The position numbers were made by a program, and so were the translations under genes. A DNA stretch of 38,563 bases from Octopus bimaculoides (lineage: Eukaryota), in the NCBI RefSeq assembly GCF_001194135.2, contig NC_068984.1:46016222-46054784 (forward strand), in the 5' to 3' direction. The notes below the pieces were generated by a model. It searched no databases. It worked only from the letters and a program-made list of their open reading frames with translations, and was not told where the DNA came from. Below are positions 632 to 37,557 of this stretch, in pieces. Within the stretch, counting starts at the first letter, position 1. The number at the start of each line of letters is the position of its first letter.

Positions 632-850
632 GGAGCAGTGAGCTTGGCAGAATCATTAGCACGCCTGACAAAATACATAACGCCATTTCCTCTGTCTCTA
701 CGTTCAGAGTTCACATTCCGACGAGGTCGGCTTTTGCTTTCATCCTTTTTAGGGTCAATAAAATAAGTACCAGTTGAGCACTGGGGTCAATGTAATCGAT
801 TTACCCCTCCCCCGAAATTGCTGGTCTTGAGGTGAAAATTTGAAATCAAT
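632..850 (+). mobile_element. tRNA-derived SINE, family A (diverged copy)
   Basis: A-box-like TGGCAGAATCATTAGC, B-box-like GAGTTCACATTCC, central GCTTTCATCCTTTTTAGGGTCAATAAAATAAGTACCAG; aligns by eye with 10873-11102 and 37352-37557. Confidence 0.8.
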
Positions 851-1209: not shown

Positions 1210-1260
1210 TATATATATATATATATATATATATCTGTGTGTGTGTGTGTGTGTGTGTGT
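1210..1260. repeat. (TA)n + (TG)n compound microsatellite
   Basis: Direct reading; left flank of the 1261-2122 element. Confidence 0.95.
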
Positions 1261-2122
1261 TTAAAAATATAAGAGTGTATAAAATATTTTTTATGCATAA
1301 AGAGGAGACCGTTAGCAGGACTCGTTACATTCTAAAAAGGCTAGTTAAAACCCAAACCATGAAAATGAGAATTCTTGAGGCACGCCATTATAACACTAGA
1401 AGGAACAAGACAAAATGAATTAGTTAATATAATGGCGCGCTTCATGAATTGTCGTTTTCGTGATTTGGGTTTTAACTGGCCTTTTTAACATGTAAGGAGT
1501 CCTGCGAATAGTCTTCTCTTTGTGTATAAAAATATTTAAAAAAATATGTTATGTTTTATGACTTTTATCTATGCATGCTAACCACCGCTAATAAGTTATT
1601 TTAATTTATTACCCTCGTATTTGCAATAGTATTATTTATAATTCTGATGCTCTATAGGATACAGCTTTAAATTTGTTTATGTACTGCTGGACTATAGATT
1701 TGTGCTTGTGCATTAATTCGAACCCGTAATGGATAAAGATGTAACTGGCTTGCGCACGTGTTTTCGGTGCGTATTTGCAACTACATAATTATTCATTAAT
1801 TAGCGATTTCGCTGATGAGCTACAGATTCCAAATTAGTTTATTTGGCAATTAATACCGAAACTTAAGTTCGGGATTATCTAATTGATTTTTTTTGTTCGT
1901 TCTATTTTATATTGGCTTGCCTCATGAATTCTCTTTTTAATGGTTTGGGTGGCAACTTGCCTTTTTAGCATGTCAGGATGCCTGTCAATGGTCTCCTCTT
2001 TATGTATAAAACTATTTTGTGCACTCTTATATTTTTAAAAATATGTTATACTTTATGACTTTTACTTATGCATGCTAACCACTGGTAATAAATTACTTTA
2101 ATTTATACCCGCATATTTACGA
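1261..2122 (+). mobile_element. Non-autonomous Penelope-like or retrozyme-like element: inverted terminal copy, about 1.4 direct units of 480 bp, and a hammerhead motif
   Basis: 1261-1427 is the reverse complement of about 1875-2040; 1428-1630 is a direct copy of 1908-2122 (offset 480); hammerhead motif at 1805-1876; microsatellites on both flanks; no ORF in the supplied track. Confidence 0.65.
1805..1876 (+). ncRNA. Type-I hammerhead ribozyme motif with palindromic stem III and long stem II
   Basis: Stem I GATTTCG/CGGGATT; core CTGATGA 1812-1818; G1819-C1857 closing pair; inner CCAAAT/ATTTGG hairpin; GAAA 1858-1861; palindrome ACTTAAGT 1861-1868; NUH triplet GTT with predicted cut after 1869. 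Confidence 0.7.
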
Positions 2123-2230
2123 TATATATATATGCACACACACATATACATTTCCATACACATATGTATGTATGTAGGTATGTATGCATACATGCATCCA
2201 TGCATATATGTATGTATGTATGTATGTATG
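2121..2230. repeat. (TA)/(CA)/(TATG)n compound microsatellite
   Basis: Direct reading. Confidence 0.9.
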
Positions 2231-2599
2231 CATCCATCAAGCTGCCTGAAATGGTGGCATTTAGTTTTGCTATCGGGCGGATTATATCTGTATCCAACAA
2301 CCGGAAACGAAAAAGAATAGAGCGAAAAAAGCAAAGATTAAATACAATGAAAGGACAAAAAATTCTAGACTTTATTGCCATAACATTATATAGCAGAGAA
2401 AAAAATAAAAAAATTTGGACAGTCATCGTCATCGTTTCTGTTATTTTTCCTGATATAATTTTTCTTTTTTGCGTAAAATATTTTGTTGTGTTTAATAAAA
2501 TAGAAAGTTTGGAACATTTTAGCCTCTAGAGATTAAACCACTCGAAAAAATATAATGAGTGTCATATTACAAACATTGGTGTTTTTCTATTCTAATGTA

Positions 2600-2602
<3 letters not shown>

Positions 2603-2656
<54 letters not shown>
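2603..2656. repeat. (TAA)n microsatellite
   Basis: Direct reading. Confidence 0.95.
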
Positions 2657-2731: not shown

Positions 2732-3126
2732 CTCCTTTGTATCTTTTAGGCATTGGACCGCGACCATTCCGAGAGAGCGCCTTGAAGTGGTTAATTGATC
2801 AAATTGGAATCGGTACATATATTTTAAAGTCTGGTACATTTTCTGTTGGTGTCTGAAGAATCGCCAAGTTATGGGGGATGTAAACGAAACAACACCGGCT
2901 GTCAAGCAGCACGAGACAAACACAAATAGATATATGTACACATGCACACATATACATACACATACATGTCAGACTTCGGAACAGTTTCTATTCATCAAAT
3001 TCCCTGAAAATATATTGCTAGGCTCGAGGTCCATATTTTTTGTCCAAGGCGCTGCACAATAGAGCTGAAACCGCAACCAAATGGTTGCATAGCGAACTTC
3101 TTAATTACACAGCCGTACTTGTGCCT
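2732..3126 (-). mobile_element. tRNA-derived bipartite SINE, family B (strongly decayed)
   Basis: Same module order as 12473-13168: 3' module, internal CA/TA tract (about 2915-2968), head ending ...CACAGCCGTACTTGTGCC on the + strand. Confidence 0.65.

Positions 3127-9368: not shown

Positions 9369-9370
<2 letters not shown>

Positions 9371-9417
<47 letters not shown>
9371..9417. repeat. (CT)n microsatellite
   Basis: Direct reading. Confidence 0.97.
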
Positions 9418-9431
<14 letters not shown>

Positions 9432-9867: not shown

Positions 9868-9909
9868 ATAGATAGATAGACAAACATACAGACAGACAGA
9901 CAGACAGAC

Positions 9910-9956
<47 letters not shown>
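9868..9956. repeat. (GATA)n/(GACA)n microsatellite
   Basis: Direct reading. Confidence 0.95.
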
Positions 9957-10132
9957 GAGGTAGATAAATAAATAGAGATTGATTATAAAGTATTGAAAGT
10001 AACGTGAATAAAAGCAACACCAGAAGATCACAAACGAAACGTGTTCTTAACACACCTAGTTCTCTGTAATATTTACCTGATTTTATTGCTGTGTATTGAT
10101 TCTTTCTTTTCTTTTGATTTTACGCCCTAGTG

Positions 10133-10213: not shown

Positions 10214-10361
10214 TGTGCATCTTCGTGAATGAGAGTGTATTTATGAATATATGCATATGCATAGTTATATATACATATATATATATAATATGTATATATA
10301 TATAGATAATATAATACACACACACTCACACATACATATATATATATATTTACATATATCT

Positions 10362-10470
10362 ATAAATATACAAGTGTATAGAATCTTTCTATACAGGAAG
10401 AGGAGATATTTGACAGGACTCCTTTCATGTTAAAAAGGCCAGTTAAAGCCTAAACAACGAAAAGAAAAAT
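10362..10470 (-). mobile_element. Fragment of the same family as the 1261-2122 element
   Basis: AGAGGAGATATTTGACAGGACTCCTTTCATGTTAAAAAGGCCAGTTAAAGCCTAAAC aligns with 1301-1357. Confidence 0.7.
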
Positions 10471-10872: not shown

Positions 10873-11102
10873 AAGGCGGCGAGCTGGCAGAAACGTTAGC
10901 ACGCCGAACGAAATGCTTAGCGGTATTTCGTCTGCCGCTACGTTCTGAGTTCAAATTCCGCCGAGGTCGACTTAGCCTTTCATCCTTTCGGGGTCGATTA
11001 AATAAGTACCAGTTACGCACTGAGATCGATATAATCGACTTAATCCCGTTTGTCTGTCCTTGTTTGTCCCTTCTGTGTGTAGCCCCTTGTGGGTAGTAAA
11101 GA
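10873..11102 (+). mobile_element. tRNA-derived SINE, family A (best-preserved copy; 3' end runs into a gap)
   Basis: A box TGGCAGAAACGTTAGC, B box GAGTTCAAATTCC, core GCCTTTCATCCTTTCGGGGTCGATTAAATAAGTACCAG. Confidence 0.85.
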
Positions 11103-11759
11103 NNNNNNNNNNNNNNNNNNNNNNNNNNNNNNNNNNNNNNNNNNNNNNNNNNNNNNNNNNNNNNNNNNNNNNNNNNNNNNNNNNNNNNNNNNNNNNNNNN
11201 NNNNNNNNNNNNNNNNNNNNNNNNNNNNNNNNNNNNNNNNNNNNNNNNNNNNNNNNNNNNNNNNNNNNNNNNNNNNNNNNNNNNNNNNNNNNNNNNNNNN
11301 NNNNNNNNNNNNNNNNNNNNNNNNNNNNNNNNNNNNNNNNNNNNNNNNNNNNNNNNNNNNNNNNNNNNNNNNNNNNNNNNNNNNNNNNNNNNNNNNNNNN
11401 NNNNNNNNNNNNNNNNNNNNNNNNNNNNNNNNNNNNNNNNNNNNNNNNNNNNNNNNNNNNNNNNNNNNNNNNNNNNNNNNNNNNNNNNNNNNNNNNNNNN
11501 NNNNNNNNNNNNNNNNNNNNNNNNNNNNNNNNNNNNNNNNNNNNNNNNNNNNNNNNNNNNNNNNNNNNNNNNNNNNNNNNNNNNNNNNNNNNNNNNNNNN
11601 NNNNNNNNNNNNNNNNNNNNNNNNNNNNNNNNNNNNNNNNNNNNNNNNNNNNNNNNNNNNNNNNNNNNNNNNNNNNNNNNNNNNNNNNNNNNNNNNNNNN
11701 NNNNNNNNNNNNNNNNNNNNNNNNNNNNNNNNNNNNNNNNNNNNNNNNNNNNNNNNNNN
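11103..11759. other. Assembly gap
   Basis: N run. Confidence 1.
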
Positions 11760-12472: not shown

Positions 12473-13168
12473 TCTTTTATCGCATTTGACTGCGGCCATG
12501 CTGGAGCACCACCGTTTAGTCGAAGAAATCGAACCCAGCACTTATTCTTTGTAAGCCTGGTACTGATTCTAACGGTCTCTTTTGCCGAACAGCTAGATCA
12601 TGTGGACGTAAACACACCAACACNNNNNNNNNNNNNNNNNNNNNNNNNNNNNNNNNNNNNNNNNNNNNNNNNNNNNNNNNNNNNNNNNNNNNNNNNNNNN
12701 NNNNNNNNNNNNNNNNNNNNNNNNNNNNNNNNNNNNNNNNNNNNNNNNNNNNNNNNNNNNNNNNNNNNNNNNNNNNNNNNNNNNNNNNNNNNNNNNNNNN
12801 NNNNNNNNNNNNNNNNNNNNNNNNNNNNNNNNNNNNNNNNNNNAACGGTCTCTTTTGCCGAACAGCTAGATCATGTGGACGTAAACACACCAACACCGGT
12901 TTTCAAGTGATGGAGGTTGGATAAACACAGACACAAAGACACACACACACACATACATACATACGTACATGCATACATACATGCGTATATATATACACAC
13001 ACACGATGGGCTTCTTTCAATTTCCATTTACCAAATCCACTCACAAGGCTTCGGTCGACACGAGGCTACAGTAGAAGTCACTTGCTTAGGGTGCCACGCA
13101 GTGGGACTGAACCCGGAACAATGTGGTTGGGAAGTAAGCTTCTTGTCACACAGCCACGCCTGCGACTA
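12473..13168 (-). mobile_element. Family B SINE, full length, interrupted by an assembly gap
   Basis: Head about 80% identical by eye to 16068-16230; internal CA/TA tract; 3' module ending GGTGCTCCAGCATGGCCGCAGTCAAATG. Confidence 0.85.
12624..12843. other. Assembly gap flanked by an identical 53-bp overlap
   Basis: N run; 12571-12623 equals 12844-12896. Confidence 1.
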
Positions 13169-13580
13169 TTTAAACATTTGTTAAACGTTTGTCTTGTGAT
13201 TCGTCTTCGTTGGTAGGGAAGCATCAATAGTACTTCGTACAATTACAAACTTACGTACGTACTATTCTCCTGCCTGGCAACGATATATAGGCCTGTTATC
13301 AGCGACACTAATGAGTAATGGATTCTTTCTTCATATGACGCTTTGAACAAATATGAAATGTCAGATCTCAACATAAAGCGCCTCTTCTAAGTATTATTTG
13401 CATAAAGAAAACATGCTTTAGAACCTTGTTCGTGAGACATAAGCTTTACTGTGTTAGTCATATGATCCACATAGAATCATCTGGAACTTCAAAGTGGCCC
13501 TTAAGCCGAGGTCTGTAGGGGAGCACTCGTGCTAGTAAAATCTCTCGCCTTTCGCAAAGAAGCATGCATCGGATAATGTG

Positions 13581-13960: not shown

Positions 13961-14549
13961 NNNNNNNNNNNNNNNNNNNNNNNNNNNNNNNNNNNNNNNN
14001 NNNNNNNNNNNNNNNNNNNNNNNNNNNNNNNNNNNNNNNNNNNNNNNNNNNNNNNNNNNNNNNNNNNNNNNNNNNNNNNNNNNNNNNNNNNNNNNNNNNN
14101 NNNNNNNNNNNNNNNNNNNNNNNNNNNNNNNNNNNNNNNNNNNNNNNNNNNNNNNNNNNNNNNNNNNNNNNNNNNNNNNNNNNNNNNNNNNNNNNNNNNN
14201 NNNNNNNNNNNNNNNNNNNNNNNNNNNNNNNNNNNNNNNNNNNNNNNNNNNNNNNNNNNNNNNNNNNNNNNNNNNNNNNNNNNNNNNNNNNNNNNNNNNN
14301 NNNNNNNNNNNNNNNNNNNNNNNNNNNNNNNNNNNNNNNNNNNNNNNNNNNNNNNNNNNNNNNNNNNNNNNNNNNNNNNNNNNNNNNNNNNNNNNNNNNN
14401 NNNNNNNNNNNNNNNNNNNNNNNNNNNNNNNNNNNNNNNNNNNNNNNNNNNNNNNNNNNNNNNNNNNNNNNNNNNNNNNNNNNNNNNNNNNNNNNNNNNN
14501 NNNNNNNNNNNNNNNNNNNNNNNNNNNNNNNNNNNNNNNNNNNNNNNNN
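13961..14549. other. Assembly gap
   Basis: N run. Confidence 1.
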
Positions 14550-14958: not shown

Positions 14959-15096
<138 letters not shown>

Positions 15097-15727: not shown

Positions 15728-16067
15728 GTACATATAGTGAATGTTGAAAGAGACTCTAGATTCAAATACTGGCTTATATTGTCATGATAGTAAACTAATA
15801 AATCAAAGAAAAGATACAGAATAATAATATAAATCCTAACGAGATGCTACTTCTACTTCGAAACTTTATTAAAAAATTATTGAGCCTTTAACTTCTTCTT
15901 TGACGACGAGTCTTTTAAGTGGGCCGTTCATCATTACAATTGTGCATTGAAAGACAGTGGCCTCAAAGTAGAACAACACTAAAACTCATAATCACACAAA
16001 TAAGAAACGAAATATCAAAATCCTGTATATAGTTTAAATGTCCATTCGAATGTTACAAATGGTTTCT

Positions 16068-16498
16068 ATAGGCGCAGGAGTGGCTGTGTGGTAAGTAGCT
16101 TGCGTACCAACCACATGCGTCTGGGTTCAGTCCCACTGCGTGGCACCTTGGGCAAGTGTCTTCTACTATAACCTCGAGCCGACCAAAGCCTTGTGAGTGG
16201 ATTTAGACGGAAACTGAAACAAGCCCGTCGTATATATCTATATATATATATATATATATATATTTATGATTGTGTATATGTTTGTGTGTCTGTGTTAGTC
16301 CCCCCAACTTCGCTTGCCAACCGATGGTAGTGTGTTTACGTCCCCGTAACTTAGCGGTTCGGCAATAAGAGACCGATAGAATAAGAACTAAGCTTAGAAA
16401 GAATATGTCCTGGGGGTCGCTTTGCTCGACTAAAGGCGGTGCCCCAGCATGGCCACAGTCAAATGAGTGAAACAAGTAAACGAGTAAAAGAAAAAGAG
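16068..16498 (+). mobile_element. Family B SINE, full length
   Basis: Head GGCGCAGGAGTGGCTGTGTGGTAAG...GGGTTCAGTCCC, box CCTTGGGCAAGTGTCTTC, internal (TA)n/(TG)n at about 16229-16295, 3' module and A-rich tail. Confidence 0.88.
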
Positions 16499-17827: not shown

Positions 17828-18174
17828 NNNNNNNNNNNNNNNNNNNNNNNNNNNNNNNNNNNNNNNNNNNNNNNNNNNNNNNNNNNNNNNNNNNNNNNNN
17901 NNNNNNNNNNNNNNNNNNNNNNNNNNNNNNNNNNNNNNNNNNNNNNNNNNNNNNNNNNNNNNNNNNNNNNNNNNNNNNNNNNNNNNNNNNNNNNNNNNNN
18001 NNNNNNNNNNNNNNNNNNNNNNNNNNNNNNNNNNNNNNNNNNNNNNNNNNNNNNNNNNNNNNNNNNNNNNNNNNNNNNNNNNNNNNNNNNNNNNNNNNNN
18101 NNNNNNNNNNNNNNNNNNNNNNNNNNNNNNNNNNNNNNNNNNNNNNNNNNNNNNNNNNNNNNNNNNNNNNNNNN
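17828..18174. other. Assembly gap
   Basis: N run. Confidence 1.
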
Positions 18175-19598: not shown

Positions 19599-20112
19599 NN
19601 NNNNNNNNNNNNNNNNNNNNNNNNNNNNNNNNNNNNNNNNNNNNNNNNNNNNNNNNNNNNNNNNNNNNNNNNNNNNNNNNNNNNNNNNNNNNNNNNNNNN
19701 NNNNNNNNNNNNNNNNNNNNNNNNNNNNNNNNNNNNNNNNNNNNNNNNNNNNNNNNNNNNNNNNNNNNNNNNNNNNNNNNNNNNNNNNNNNNNNNNNNNN
19801 NNNNNNNNNNNNNNNNNNNNNNNNNNNNNNNNNNNNNNNNNNNNNNNNNNNNNNNNNNNNNNNNNNNNNNNNNNNNNNNNNNNNNNNNNNNNNNNNNNNN
19901 NNNNNNNNNNNNNNNNNNNNNNNNNNNNNNNNNNNNNNNNNNNNNNNNNNNNNNNNNNNNNNNNNNNNNNNNNNNNNNNNNNNNNNNNNNNNNNNNNNNN
20001 NNNNNNNNNNNNNNNNNNNNNNNNNNNNNNNNNNNNNNNNNNNNNNNNNNNNNNNNNNNNNNNNNNNNNNNNNNNNNNNNNNNNNNNNNNNNNNNNNNNN
20101 NNNNNNNNNNNN
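19599..20112. other. Assembly gap
   Basis: N run. Confidence 1.
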
Positions 20113-20319: not shown

Positions 20320-20322
<3 letters not shown>

Positions 20323-20363
<41 letters not shown>

Positions 20364-20364
20364 C

Positions 20365-20402
<38 letters not shown>
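20323..20402. repeat. (TTTC)n microsatellite
   Basis: Direct reading. Confidence 0.95.
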
Positions 20403-20860: not shown

Positions 20861-21592
20861 NNNNNNNNNNNNNNNNNNNNNNNNNNNNNNNNNNNNNNNN
20901 NNNNNNNNNNNNNNNNNNNNNNNNNNNNNNNNNNNNNNNNNNNNNNNNNNNNNNNNNNNNNNNNNNNNNNNNNNNNNNNNNNNNNNNNNNNNNNNNNNNN
21001 NNNNNNNNNNNNNNNNNNNNNNNNNNNNNNNNNNNNNNNNNNNNNNNNNNNNNNNNNNNNNNNNNNNNNNNNNNNNNNNNNNNNNNNNNNNNNNNNNNNN
21101 NNNNNNNNNNNNNNNNNNNNNNNNNNNNNNNNNNNNNNNNNNNNNNNNNNNNNNNNNNNNNNNNNNNNNNNNNNNNNNNNNNNNNNNNNNNNNNNNNNNN
21201 NNNNNNNNNNNNNNNNNNNNNNNNNNNNNNNNNNNNNNNNNNNNNNNNNNNNNNNNNNNNNNNNNNNNNNNNNNNNNNNNNNNNNNNNNNNNNNNNNNNN
21301 NNNNNNNNNNNNNNNNNNNNNNNNNNNNNNNNNNNNNNNNNNNNNNNNNNNNNNNNNNNNNNNNNNNNNNNNNNNNNNNNNNNNNNNNNNNNNNNNNNNN
21401 NNNNNNNNNNNNNNNNNNNNNNNNNNNNNNNNNNNNNNNNNNNNNNNNNNNNNNNNNNNNNNNNNNNNNNNNNNNNNNNNNNNNNNNNNNNNNNNNNNNN
21501 NNNNNNNNNNNNNNNNNNNNNNNNNNNNNNNNNNNNNNNNNNNNNNNNNNNNNNNNNNNNNNNNNNNNNNNNNNNNNNNNNNNNNNNNNNNN
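20861..21592. other. Assembly gap
   Basis: N run with CCT-rich flanks. Confidence 1.
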
Positions 21593-22916: not shown

Positions 22917-23094
22917 CAATGCCAACATTAACAAGAAAGAAAAAATAACAACGCGAGGACGTAGAACAAGTACAGTGTTATTGGATGCTGAGGAAAGGAA
23001 AGAAAAGAAAGAGGATTTCACGTTTCGAGCGAAACTCTTCATCAGAAATATAGAAAAAGTCCGAAGAAGGGAAGACGGAGACAGAAAATTGCCA
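22915..23094 (-). mobile_element. Penelope-like terminal fragment with hammerhead motif, ending in (TA)n
   Basis: HHR-like motif followed by a pyrimidine-rich tail of about 100 nt joined to (TA)n at 22875-22914; 5' side lost in a gap. Confidence 0.55.
23015..23049 (-). ncRNA. Minimal hammerhead-like motif (extra A after the core, ACGT stem III)
   Basis: Minus strand: ATTT-CTGATGA-A-GAG-TTTCG-CTC-GAAACGT-G-AAAT; stems I and II pair, but position 17 is G, which is non-canonical. Confidence 0.55.
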
Positions 23095-23211
23095 NNNNNN
23101 NNNNNNNNNNNNNNNNNNNNNNNNNNNNNNNNNNNNNNNNNNNNNNNNNNNNNNNNNNNNNNNNNNNNNNNNNNNNNNNNNNNNNNNNNNNNNNNNNNNN
23201 NNNNNNNNNNN
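23095..23211. other. Assembly gap
   Basis: N run. Confidence 1.
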
Positions 23212-37351: not shown

Positions 37352-37557
37352 GTGTAACTAGCACGCCAGACAAAATGCTTAGTGGCAATTGCTCTGTTTT
37401 GACGTTCGGAATTCAAATTGCACTGCGATCGACTTTGCCTTTCATCCTTTCGGGTTCGATCAAATAAGTATCATTTGAGGATGTGGGGTCCATGTAATCC
37501 TCTAGCACTGTCCCATGAAATTTCGGGACTTCTGCCTACAGTAGAACGAATAATAAG
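37352..37557 (+). mobile_element. Family A SINE (diverged; third tail type)
   Basis: TAGCACGCCAGACAAAATGCTTAG...GAATTCAAATT...GCCTTTCATCCTTTCGGGTTCGATCAAATAAGTATC. Confidence 0.8.

What the first reader, a model, noticed from the sequence alone, without database searches (positions are those of the whole stretch)
1805..1876. Intact-core hammerhead ribozyme with a minimal palindromic stem III and an unusually long stem II
Seen in sequence: every canonical core position is present (C3-A9 CTGATGA, G10.1-C11.1, GAAA, A15.1-U16.1, NUH=GUU). Stem I has 7 bp. Stem III is 2 bp plus a TTAA loop inside the 8-nt palindrome ACTTAAGT. Stem II pairs in register over about 16 bp with three mismatches and one bulge. 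Established: minimal type-I hammerheads with palindromic stem III occur in Penelope-like elements and cleave as dimers (Cervera and de la Pena; Lunse et al.). Inference: this is a self-cleaving motif of a non-autonomous element, and the long stem II is unusual for the minimal class.
Basis: partly seen in the sequence, partly recalled or inferred. Interest (0 to 1): 0.9.

Follow-up and report, generated by a model that had tools for sequence, protein, structure and literature searches.

The report
Hammerhead ribozyme in a Penelope-type retroelement
A complete hammerhead self-cleaving RNA motif really is at this spot, inside an old, short, non-coding retroelement insertion of the Penelope-like kind, a combination already known from many animal genomes, so it is genuine but ordinary.

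Summary
It is a type-I hammerhead with core CUGAUGA (1812-1818), G10.1-C11.1, GAAA, A15.1-U16.1 and GUU, cutting after U1869. Helix III is 2 bp plus a UUAA loop inside the palindrome ACUUAAGU. Helix II has 16 positions: 13 pairs, 3 mismatches and 1 bulge.

After a 1x2 internal loop come 9 more pairs, so the motif spans 1795-1887.

My descriptor finds this site only. It expects 0.0003-0.002 chance hits per window. The outer stem adds p~0.003.

Rfam does not call it: Hammerhead_HH9 scores 16.3 bits against a gathering score of 52.

The context is the stronger evidence. The motif lies in an 874-nt insertion (1260-2133) made of an inverted 5'-truncated copy joined head-to-head to a 1.5-unit partial tandem of a ~480-nt non-coding unit. 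Microsatellites flank both sides. This is the published hallmark of Penelope-like element (PLE) insertions.

The inverted copy starts 5 nt after the cut site.

The copies differ by 17-25%, so this is an old insertion and probably a fossil.

No other genomic copies could be retrieved, so covariation is untested.

It is a new member of a known kind. The long helix II is a modest variation.

The parts
1795..1887 (+). Complete type-I hammerhead motif (93 nt), including the outer part of stem I
1795..1803 (+). Stem I outer helix, 5' strand. It pairs with 1879-1887 (9 bp, 8 Watson-Crick). It is separated from the inner helix by internal loop C1804 / A1877 U1878.
   Evidence: HH9 alignment; p~0.003
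1805..1811 (+). Stem I inner helix, 5' strand (GAUUUCG). It pairs with 1870-1876.
1812..1818 (+). Core box C3-A9, CUGAUGA
1819..1857 (+). Helix II. Next to the core: G-C, C.C, U-A, A-U. Then a 2x2 internal loop (CA/AA). Then a 10-bp distal hairpin (one G.U) with bulge C1847 and loop UAGUUU (1835-1840).
1858..1861 (+). Core box G12 A13 A14 A15.1 (GAAA)
1861..1868 (+). Helix III, 2 bp plus loop UUAA. This is the 8-nt palindrome ACUUAAGU, able to form an 8-bp helix III between two copies.
1869..1870 (+). Predicted self-cleavage site, between U1869 (H17) and C1870
   Evidence: inferred from hammerhead numbering applied
1870..1887 (+). Stem I 3' strand (inner 1870-1876, loop 1877-1878, outer 1879-1887). 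It is also the first bases of the next repeat unit.
1260..1428 (-). Copy A: inverted, 5'-truncated copy equivalent to 1874-2039 (83% identity). Its 5' end lies 5 nt downstream of the cut-site equivalent. Its 3' end abuts (TG)n.
1428..1869 (+). Copy B plus the unique part. This is a nearly complete unit: it starts at position +39 relative to a cut site and runs through the hammerhead to the cut site. 1428-1639 is homologous to 1908-2133.
1870..2133 (+). Copy C: the start of the next tandem unit, from the cut site to about +256-264, ending in (TA)n
10352..10444 (-). Copy D: a solo 5'-truncated copy of the same family (equivalent to 1954-2046). It lies between (CA)n and (TA)n and shares its 3' end with copy A (+177 against +170).
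1210..1259 (.). Left target microsatellite, (TA)n then (TG)n
2124..2240 (.). Right target microsatellite, (TA)n/(CA)n/(TATG)n

Best explanation
The site is a genuine type-I hammerhead ribozyme carried by a short (~480 nt), non-coding, AT-rich retroelement. The element was inserted by the machinery of a Penelope-like element, and the copy is now probably a fossil.

Shown:
- All core nucleotides and three helices are present.
- Stem I is long and interrupted (7+9 bp).
- Helix III is too short to hold on its own, but it is an 8-nt palindrome.
- The motif lies in an insertion (1260-2133) made of an inverted 5'-truncated copy joined head-to-head to a 1.5-unit partial tandem, with microsatellites on both outer sides.
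- Two independent copies (A and D) end at the same 3' position, about 170-177 nt after the cut site.

Inferred mechanism:
- The element is transcribed as more-than-unit RNA.
- Two hammerheads, on one multimeric transcript or on two RNAs, pair through ACUUAAGU. This forms a stable 8-bp helix III and each then cuts after GUU. The products carry 5'-OH and 2',3'-cyclic phosphate ends.
- In the monomer, alternative hairpins (1799-1816 and 1856-1872) sequester both core boxes and keep it inactive.
- Unit-length or cleaved RNA is copied by a PLE reverse transcriptase/GIY-YIG endonuclease supplied in trans. Priming occurs at nicked microsatellite DNA, from a fixed internal start site downstream of the hammerhead.
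- Priming on both target strands gives the head-to-head inverted/direct arrangement.
- The inverted copy begins 5 nt after the cut site. That is what a run-off cDNA of the 3' cleavage product would look like.

The three mismatches in helix II and the four G.U pairs in stem I are most simply decay of a once more regular helix, because the copies have diverged 17-25%.
For: Motif and pairs. Chance expectation 0-0.002 per window. Outer stem I p~0.003 and helix II hairpin p~0.04. Pattern-only look-alikes elsewhere lack stem I. The sub-threshold HH9 alignment places every core base and both stem I segments.

Repeat architecture and boundaries. Microsatellite flanks.

Published PLE hallmark (5' truncation, partial tandems forming pLTRs, an adjacent inverted 5'-truncated copy, a tail, microsatellite targets, hammerhead in the pLTR): PMC8557442. 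A PLE protein cuts both DNA strands and starts reverse transcription at internal sites roughly 90 nt downstream of its hammerhead cut site: PMC11167929. Short palindromic helix III and dimeric action in metazoan and PLE hammerheads: PMC4209133 and PMC3088659.

Monomer hammerhead fold -11.6 to -13.3 kcal/mol against an MFE of -19.6 with core-sequestering hairpins. The palindrome forms an 8-bp self-duplex. There is no ORF after the AUG in the core. No Pfam domain was found in the ten longest non-repetitive ORF segments.
Against: No Rfam hammerhead model reaches its gathering score.

There is only one hammerhead copy in the window and none could be retrieved elsewhere. So there is no covariation, no family consensus and no expression or cleavage data.

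Thermodynamic folding does not favour the hammerhead fold.

The window holds no recognisable PLE RT/GIY-YIG ORF, so the PLE link rests on insertion architecture alone.

The 5'-end coincidence with the cut site is one case. It is off by 4 nt and is not independent of the B junction.

For the one PLE studied in vitro, hammerhead cleavage was not needed for insertion, and no RNA-seq reads ended at the cut site (PMC11167929).

A genome-wide scan has many windows, so the per-window chance figure alone would not suffice.
Confidence: 0.78

Rival explanations
1. Non-LTR retrozyme. The ~480-nt unit belongs to a tandem-repeat family whose multimeric transcripts self-cleave and are ligated into small circular RNAs. 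Those circles serve as templates for retrotransposition. This locus would be a short, decayed array. This overlaps with the best explanation, because animal retrozymes are argued to be non-autonomous derivatives of PLEs.
For: The locus holds a direct tandem of 1.5 units with the unit junction at the hammerhead. GC is low at 0.31. The hammerhead is type I with a 2-bp helix III and a tetraloop, as in invertebrate retrozymes (PMC7229834). The long stem I spanning the cut site would hold the ends together for ligation (inference). Retrozymes are linked to PLE pLTRs (bioRxiv 10.64898/2026.07.22.740005).
Against: Only one hammerhead is present. The working definition needs at least two consecutive units that each carry a complete motif. 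The inverted head-to-head copy and the shared fixed 3' ends of copies A and D point to linear target-primed insertion from a defined start site, not to copying of a circle. There are no expression data.
Confidence: 0.3
2. Chance look-alike. An AT-rich repeat happens to contain CUGAUGA and GAAA with fortuitous flanking complementarity, and the RNA never cleaved.
For: Rfam scores it far below threshold. The MFE fold is not the hammerhead. Helix II has three mismatches and stem I has four G.U pairs. The first stage scanned many windows, so rare chance hits are expected somewhere.
Against: The descriptor expects 0-0.002 hits per window. An independent 9-bp outer stem adds p~0.003 and a helix II hairpin adds p~0.04, giving a joint order of 1e-7 per window. 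G10.1-C11.1 and the palindromic helix III are class-typical features. The position is exactly at the unit junction of a PLE-style insertion. All 18 core-plus-palindrome matches in other collections lack stem I.
Confidence: 0.07
3. Remnant of an autonomous Penelope-like element. The repeats are pLTR fragments of a full-length coding PLE whose ORF was lost here by truncation or deletion, rather than a dedicated non-autonomous family.
For: Hammerheads of PLEs lie in pLTRs. Most genomic motifs are solo remnants of truncated PLEs.
Against: Copy B runs without a break through the unique part and the hammerhead into copy C. The whole period is about 480 nt with no room for an ORF. The reading frame from the AUG in the core stops after 12 codons. 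No RT or GIY-YIG signal was found in the window's longest ORF segments (a limited test).
Confidence: 0.15

Closest known systems
Canonical metazoan type-I hammerheads of repeat DNA (Schistosoma Sm-alpha, newt satellite 2, amniote HH9 / Rfam RF02275)
   Same: Open stem I made of an inner 6-7 bp helix, an internal loop and an outer helix. Identical core with G10.1-C11.1. Helix III of 1-3 bp capped by a small palindromic loop, which implies dimeric action. Residence in dispersed or tandem repeats.
   Different: Helix II has 16 positions with a distal 10-bp hairpin, not 4 bp plus a loop. The conserved loop 1 / loop 2 nucleotides for the tertiary contact are not recognisable. It scores only 16.3 bits against the HH9 model.
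Min-HHRs of Penelope-like elements (Cervera and de la Pena 2014; Lunse et al. 2017, the latter from memory)
   Same: Palindromic 15.2-16.2 and loop 3. Helix II longer than canonical. Conserved G10.1-C11.1. Association with PLE-type insertions. Mostly solo motifs. Expected low activity as a monomer.
   Different: No unpaired nucleotide between A9 and G10.1. Helix I is 7+9 bp, not 4-5 bp. Helix II is about twice the 6-8 bp reported. No PLE ORF is nearby.
Animal non-LTR retrozymes (Cervera and de la Pena 2020; Li et al. 2026 preprint)
   Same: A short, non-coding, low-GC unit with one type-I hammerhead per unit, in head-to-tail arrangement. A PLE origin has been proposed.
   Different: Only 1.5 units and a single hammerhead here. 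An inverted copy is attached. The unit of about 480 nt is longer than the 330-350 bp axolotl repeats described. Circular RNA was not shown.
PLE insertion architecture (Craig et al. 2021; Frangieh et al. 2024)
   Same: 5' truncation, a partial tandem, an adjacent inverted 5'-truncated copy, microsatellite targets, and 3' ends at fixed positions downstream of the hammerhead with a longer variant.
   Different: The two 3'-end classes differ by about 85 nt (+170/177 against about +260), not the 30-40 nt tail. No autonomous partner was identified.

Membership tests
Hammerhead ribozyme, type I | Conserved core: C3 U4 G5 A6 N7 G8 A9, G12 A13 A14, A15.1-U16.1, H17 not G | tested here: met
   1812-1818 CUGAUGA, 1858-1861 GAAA, U1868, U1869
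Hammerhead ribozyme, type I | Three helices around the core with G10.1-C11.1 closing helix II, stem I open, and loops on helices II and III | tested here: met
   Pair list. Stem I is 7+9 bp, helix II has 13 pairs over 16 positions, helix III is 2 bp.
Hammerhead ribozyme, type I | Score at or above the gathering threshold of an Rfam hammerhead covariance model | tested here: not met
   No hit at gathering. HH9 scores 16.3 bits against 52, E 0.21 on 301 nt.
Hammerhead ribozyme, type I | Compensatory changes in the stems among homologous copies | not testable with these tools
   There is no second hammerhead copy in the window. None was retrieved from protein, metagenome, genome or viral collections.
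Hammerhead ribozyme, type I | Mg2+-dependent self-cleavage 3' of H17 | not testable with these tools
   This needs in vitro transcription of monomer and dimer constructs.
PLE min-HHR (Cervera and de la Pena 2014) | Absent or minimal helix III, with palindromic 15.2-16.2 and loop 3 | tested here: met
   ACUUAAGU is a perfect palindrome.
PLE min-HHR (Cervera and de la Pena 2014) | Unpaired nucleotide between A9 and G10.1 | tested here: not met
   A1818 is followed directly by G1819, which pairs with C1857. The feature is described.
PLE min-HHR (Cervera and de la Pena 2014) | Short helix I (4-5 bp) and enlarged helix II (6-8 bp) | tested here: inconclusive
   Helix II is enlarged, even more than described. 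Helix I is long at 7+9 bp.
PLE min-HHR (Cervera and de la Pena 2014) | Location in the pLTR of an element that encodes RT and GIY-YIG endonuclease | tested here: inconclusive
   The tandem/inverted architecture is PLE-like. No RT/EN domain was found in the ten ORF segments scanned and the unit has no ORF.
Non-LTR retrozyme | At least two consecutive tandem units, each with a complete type-I hammerhead | tested here: not met
   There is one hammerhead in 1.5 units.
Non-LTR retrozyme | Short non-coding unit of low GC (<45%) | tested here: met
   The unit is about 480 nt with GC 0.31-0.32 and no ORF.
Non-LTR retrozyme | Expression as small circular RNA | not testable with these tools
   No transcriptome data are available.
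Penelope-like element insertion | Partial tandem, plus an adjacent inverted 5'-truncated copy, inserted in a microsatellite | tested here: met
   Copy A (inverted) joins copy B at 1428. The sequence then runs B, unique part, C as a 1.5-unit tandem. (TA)n/(TG)n lie on both outer sides.

The most novel reading that the evidence does not exclude
This locus may represent an undescribed family of ~480-nt PLE-dependent non-autonomous elements. From memory the host is a cephalopod, but this is unverified. Two things would make the family notable.

First, its hammerhead carries a long helix II. The 2x2 internal loop four positions from the core would replace loop 2 as the partner of the stem I internal loop.

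Second, its insertions would begin at the ribozyme cut site (copy A at +5, copy B at +39). That would be genomic fossil evidence that hammerhead-cleaved RNA is the template of PLE reverse transcription in vivo. The role of the hammerhead in PLE transposition is still unsettled, because cleavage was dispensable in the only in vitro system.
Probability: 0.15. Interest if true: 0.55.

Novelty: new member of a known kind. Interest (0 to 1): 0.27.

Why it matters
It adds one more well-formed hammerhead to the very large set already known from animal repeats, so by itself it changes little.

Two points are worth keeping. First, the locus shows the complete PLE insertion signature for a unit with no ORF. 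That supports the view that short hammerhead-bearing repeats are mobilised by Penelope-like elements. Second, the 5' ends of the copies cluster just downstream of the cut site. If that holds across the family, it could be used genome-wide to ask whether ribozyme cleavage precedes reverse transcription in vivo.

Practically, the case also shows that Rfam thresholds miss hammerheads with insertions in helix II.

Tried and rejected
1. Rfam at gathering thresholds over the whole window gave nothing. E-value mode gave only a sub-threshold HH9 hit.

2. I tried to collect genomic copies through spurious ORFs of the repeat in the large protein collection. The 52-aa frame across copy A found no candidate.

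3. A 23-base degenerate pattern conserved in all four repeat copies of the window found 0 matches in metagenome contigs and 0 in bacterial/archaeal genome contigs.

4. The class-level pattern, core plus CGAAACTTAAGT, found 5 viral and 13 metagenome matches. None has a stem I, so they served only as negative controls.

5. I tried to identify the organism with a repeat-derived 132-aa ORF. It gave one unnamed 98-aa hit on a 538-nt ENA contig (sample ERZ1023377), which was uninformative. The cephalopod guess rests on my memory of an abundant repeat and is not verified.

6. A Pfam scan of the ten longest non-repetitive ORF segments found no RT, GIY-YIG or any credible domain. ARAGORN found no tRNA.

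7. Other CUGANGA...GAAA occurrences in the window (for example 2853-2889 on + and 23045-23023 on -) have no hammerhead stems and were rejected.

8. I tried to evaluate the energy of the dimeric double-hammerhead. That structure is not nested, so the nearest-neighbour model cannot score it. Only the 8-bp palindrome duplex was evaluated.

9. The long 'inverted repeats' and the 8-nt-spaced families reported by the repeat finder are runs of N and microsatellites, not features.

Full report
WHAT THE WINDOW IS. The 38.5-kb window is AT-rich (GC 0.23-0.37). It is eukaryote-like non-coding DNA, crowded with microsatellites and interrupted by ten runs of N totalling 4385 N. No ORF segment has a credible Pfam domain and no tRNA is found. 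From memory, two dispersed repeat families resemble abundant cephalopod (octopus) SINEs. I could not verify the organism.

THE OBSERVATION.
- Inner stem I: 1805-1811 pairs with 1870-1876 (7 bp, 3 of them G.U).
- Core: CUGAUGA at 1812-1818, G1819-C1857 as 10.1-11.1, and GAAA at 1858-1861.
- Helix III: A1861-U1868 and C1862-G1867 around loop UUAA. Together these form the perfect palindrome ACUUAAGU.
- Cleavage: the GUU triplet puts the cut after U1869.
- Helix II: 16 stacked positions with 13 pairs, three mismatches (C.C, C.A, A.A), one bulged C (1847) and a 6-nt loop.

After a 1x2 internal loop (C1804 / A1877 U1878), nine further pairs form between 1795-1803 and 1879-1887, eight of them Watson-Crick. 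The sub-threshold Rfam HH9 alignment uses this same two-part stem I.

IS IT MORE THAN CHANCE? A descriptor I wrote requires the core, G10.1-C11.1, at least 3 of 4 proximal helix II pairs, a 2-bp helix III, H17 not G, and a stem I of 5-7 bp. It hits only this site on either strand. Sequences simulated from the window's first- or second-order composition gave 0-0.0013 hits per window, and about 0.002 when one stem I mismatch was allowed. The outer stem I extension occurs in 0.3% of shuffled flanks. The helix II hairpin energy is reached by 4% of shuffles. Taken together the expectation is of order 1e-7 per window, which is small even for a gigabase genome. As an empirical control, 18 matches to 'core plus CGAAACTTAAGT' in viral and metagenome collections all lack stem I.

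Two results count against it. No Rfam hammerhead model reaches its gathering score: HH9 gives 16.3 bits against 52, with 29 nt of helix II treated as an insertion. The thermodynamic optimum of the monomer is also not the hammerhead. The MFE is -19.6 kcal/mol, with hairpins 1799-1816 and 1856-1872 sequestering both core boxes. The hammerhead fold scores -11.6 to -13.3 kcal/mol. That behaviour is expected for hammerheads with a 2-bp helix III, which are known to be poor as monomers.

THE SURROUNDINGS. Self-comparison shows four copies of one repeat.
- Copy A (1428 down to 1260, minus strand) equals 1874-2039 at 83% identity.
- Copy B (1428-1639) equals 1908-2133 at about 75-78%. It continues without a break through a unique stretch that contains the hammerhead.
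- Copy C (1870-2133) is the start of the next unit.
- Copy D (10444 down to 10352, minus strand) equals 1954-2046.

The period is about 480 nt. The block 1260-2133 therefore reads as an inverted 5'-truncated copy, joined head-to-head at 1428 to a direct 1.5-unit partial tandem. The block is bounded on the left by (TA)n(TG)n (1210-1259) and on the right by (TA)n/(CA)n (from 2124). Copy D is also bounded by (CA)n and (TA)n.

Relative to the cut site, the 5' ends lie at +5 (A), +39 (B) and about +85 (D, by local alignment). The 3' ends lie at +170 (A), +177 (D) and about +256-264 (C).

The unit has no ORF. The AUG inside CUGAUGA opens a 12-codon frame. GC is 0.31.

COMPARISON WITH PUBLISHED WORK. 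Craig et al. describe PLE insertions as highly 5'-truncated and organised in partial tandems that form pLTRs. These often carry an inverted 5'-truncated copy directly adjacent at the 5' end and an optional tail, show an insertion bias for microsatellites, and in canonical PLEs carry the hammerhead in the pLTR (PMC8557442). Frangieh et al. show that a purified PLE protein cuts both strands of the target. They also show that it starts reverse transcription at two internal sites roughly 90 nt downstream of the hammerhead cut site, which explains the tail (PMC11167929). Priming on both strands would give exactly the head-to-head arrangement seen here, with each copy's 3' end at a target flank and the 5' ends meeting in the middle. 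That link is my inference.

Cervera and de la Pena describe metazoan type-I hammerheads with a helix III of 1-2 bp capped by a 2-4 nt palindromic loop that act as dimers. They also describe PLE min-HHRs with an enlarged helix II of 6-8 bp, and note that most motifs are solo remnants (PMC4209133). Perreault et al. report the same palindromic stem/loop III in repeat-type hammerheads and stress that helix lengths vary (PMC3088659). Animal retrozymes are tandem units with one type-I hammerhead each, and are argued to derive from PLE pLTRs. Hammerheads and Penelope elements have been reported in a cephalopod genome: the giant squid has 235 Hammerhead_1 hits (PMC6962438).

MOST LIKELY MECHANISM. Shown: the motif, the helices, the palindrome, the repeat architecture and the flanks. 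Everything else in this section is inferred.

More-than-unit transcripts let two hammerheads pair through ACUUAAGU into an 8-bp helix III (self-duplex -6.6 kcal/mol). Each then cuts after GUU. The monomer is held inactive by the alternative hairpins. The RNA is copied in trans by a PLE RT/endonuclease at nicked microsatellites, from fixed start sites about 170 and about 260 nt downstream of the cut. Copy A, spanning +5 to +170, has the extent expected for a full cDNA of the 3' cleavage product. This is suggestive, at roughly 2% by chance. It is a single case, is 4 nt off, and is linked to the B junction.

Because A, B and C differ by 17-25%, the insertion is old. With about 12% change per lineage, an intact 14-nt core is expected in roughly one copy in six by chance. 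The intact core is therefore not evidence of selection at this locus. The helix II mismatches and the stem I G.U pairs are most simply decay.

An alternative reading of helix II is 4 proximal positions, a 2x2 internal loop and a 10-bp extension. In that reading the internal loop would play the part of loop 2 opposite the stem I internal loop. This cannot be excluded without a family consensus.

RIVALS.
- A retrozyme array is compatible with the data and overlaps with the main explanation. It fails the two-hammerhead criterion here.
- A remnant of a coding PLE is unlikely, because the whole period is about 480 nt.
- Pure chance is unlikely given the joint statistics and the position at the unit junction.

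WHAT COULD NOT BE DONE. No other copy of the hammerhead-bearing part was found in the window or in any searchable collection.

VERDICT. This is a real, structurally complete type-I hammerhead of the repeat/PLE-associated kind, in a textbook PLE-style insertion of a short non-coding element. It is most likely a fossil copy. It is a new member of a known kind. The extended helix II and the extended stem I are modest variations. Interest is low to moderate.

Noticed in passing
window 11103-11759, 12624-12843, 13961-14549, 17828-18174, 19599-20112, 20861-21592, 23095-23211, 25893-26256, 31534-32258, 33647-33766: Ten runs of N (4385 bases in all) show that this is a gapped scaffold. The 600-700-nt '98-100% inverted repeats' and the 8-nt-spaced repeat families reported by the repeat finder are these N runs and microsatellites, not real features.
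   Followed up: yes
window 640-803, 10881-11042, 37359-37499: A dispersed SINE-like repeat family, 75-80% identical between copies. From memory it resembles an abundant octopus SINE. The organism was not verified.
   Followed up: partly
window 16055-16215, 13033-13181 (-), 33450-33610, 34894-34997: A second dispersed repeat family (72-84% identity) that ends in a (TA)n/(TG)n tail. The sequence just left of the hammerhead insertion (1184-1262) resembles that tail (76% over 79 nt). The PLE-type insertion may therefore sit in the microsatellite tail of such a repeat.
   Followed up: partly
window 1799-1816 and 1856-1872: Two local hairpins, UUAGCGA/UCGCUGA and CCGAA/UUCGG, pair with the CUGA and GAAA core boxes and dominate the predicted monomer fold. 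They could act as a built-in off-state, or they could be coincidence. The second is part of a larger near-palindrome around ACUUAAGU that also dominates the predicted dimer.
   Followed up: partly
window 23023-23045 (-) and 2853-2889 (+): Other CUGA(N)GA...GAAAC occurrences. They have no stem I or helix III and are chance core look-alikes.
   Followed up: yes
window 2600-2655, 14960-15095, 9370-9420, 9880-9960, 20320-20400: Long pure microsatellites, (ATA)n, (TC)n, (GACA/GATA)n and (CTTT)n, at unusually high density. Such tracts are the preferred targets described for PLE insertions.
   Followed up: no
L019 (ENA sample ERZ1023377, 538-nt contig): This was the only protein-level relative of a repeat-derived ORF of the window (48% identity over 68% of the query). 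It suggests that DNA of a related host is present in that metagenome assembly.
   Followed up: no
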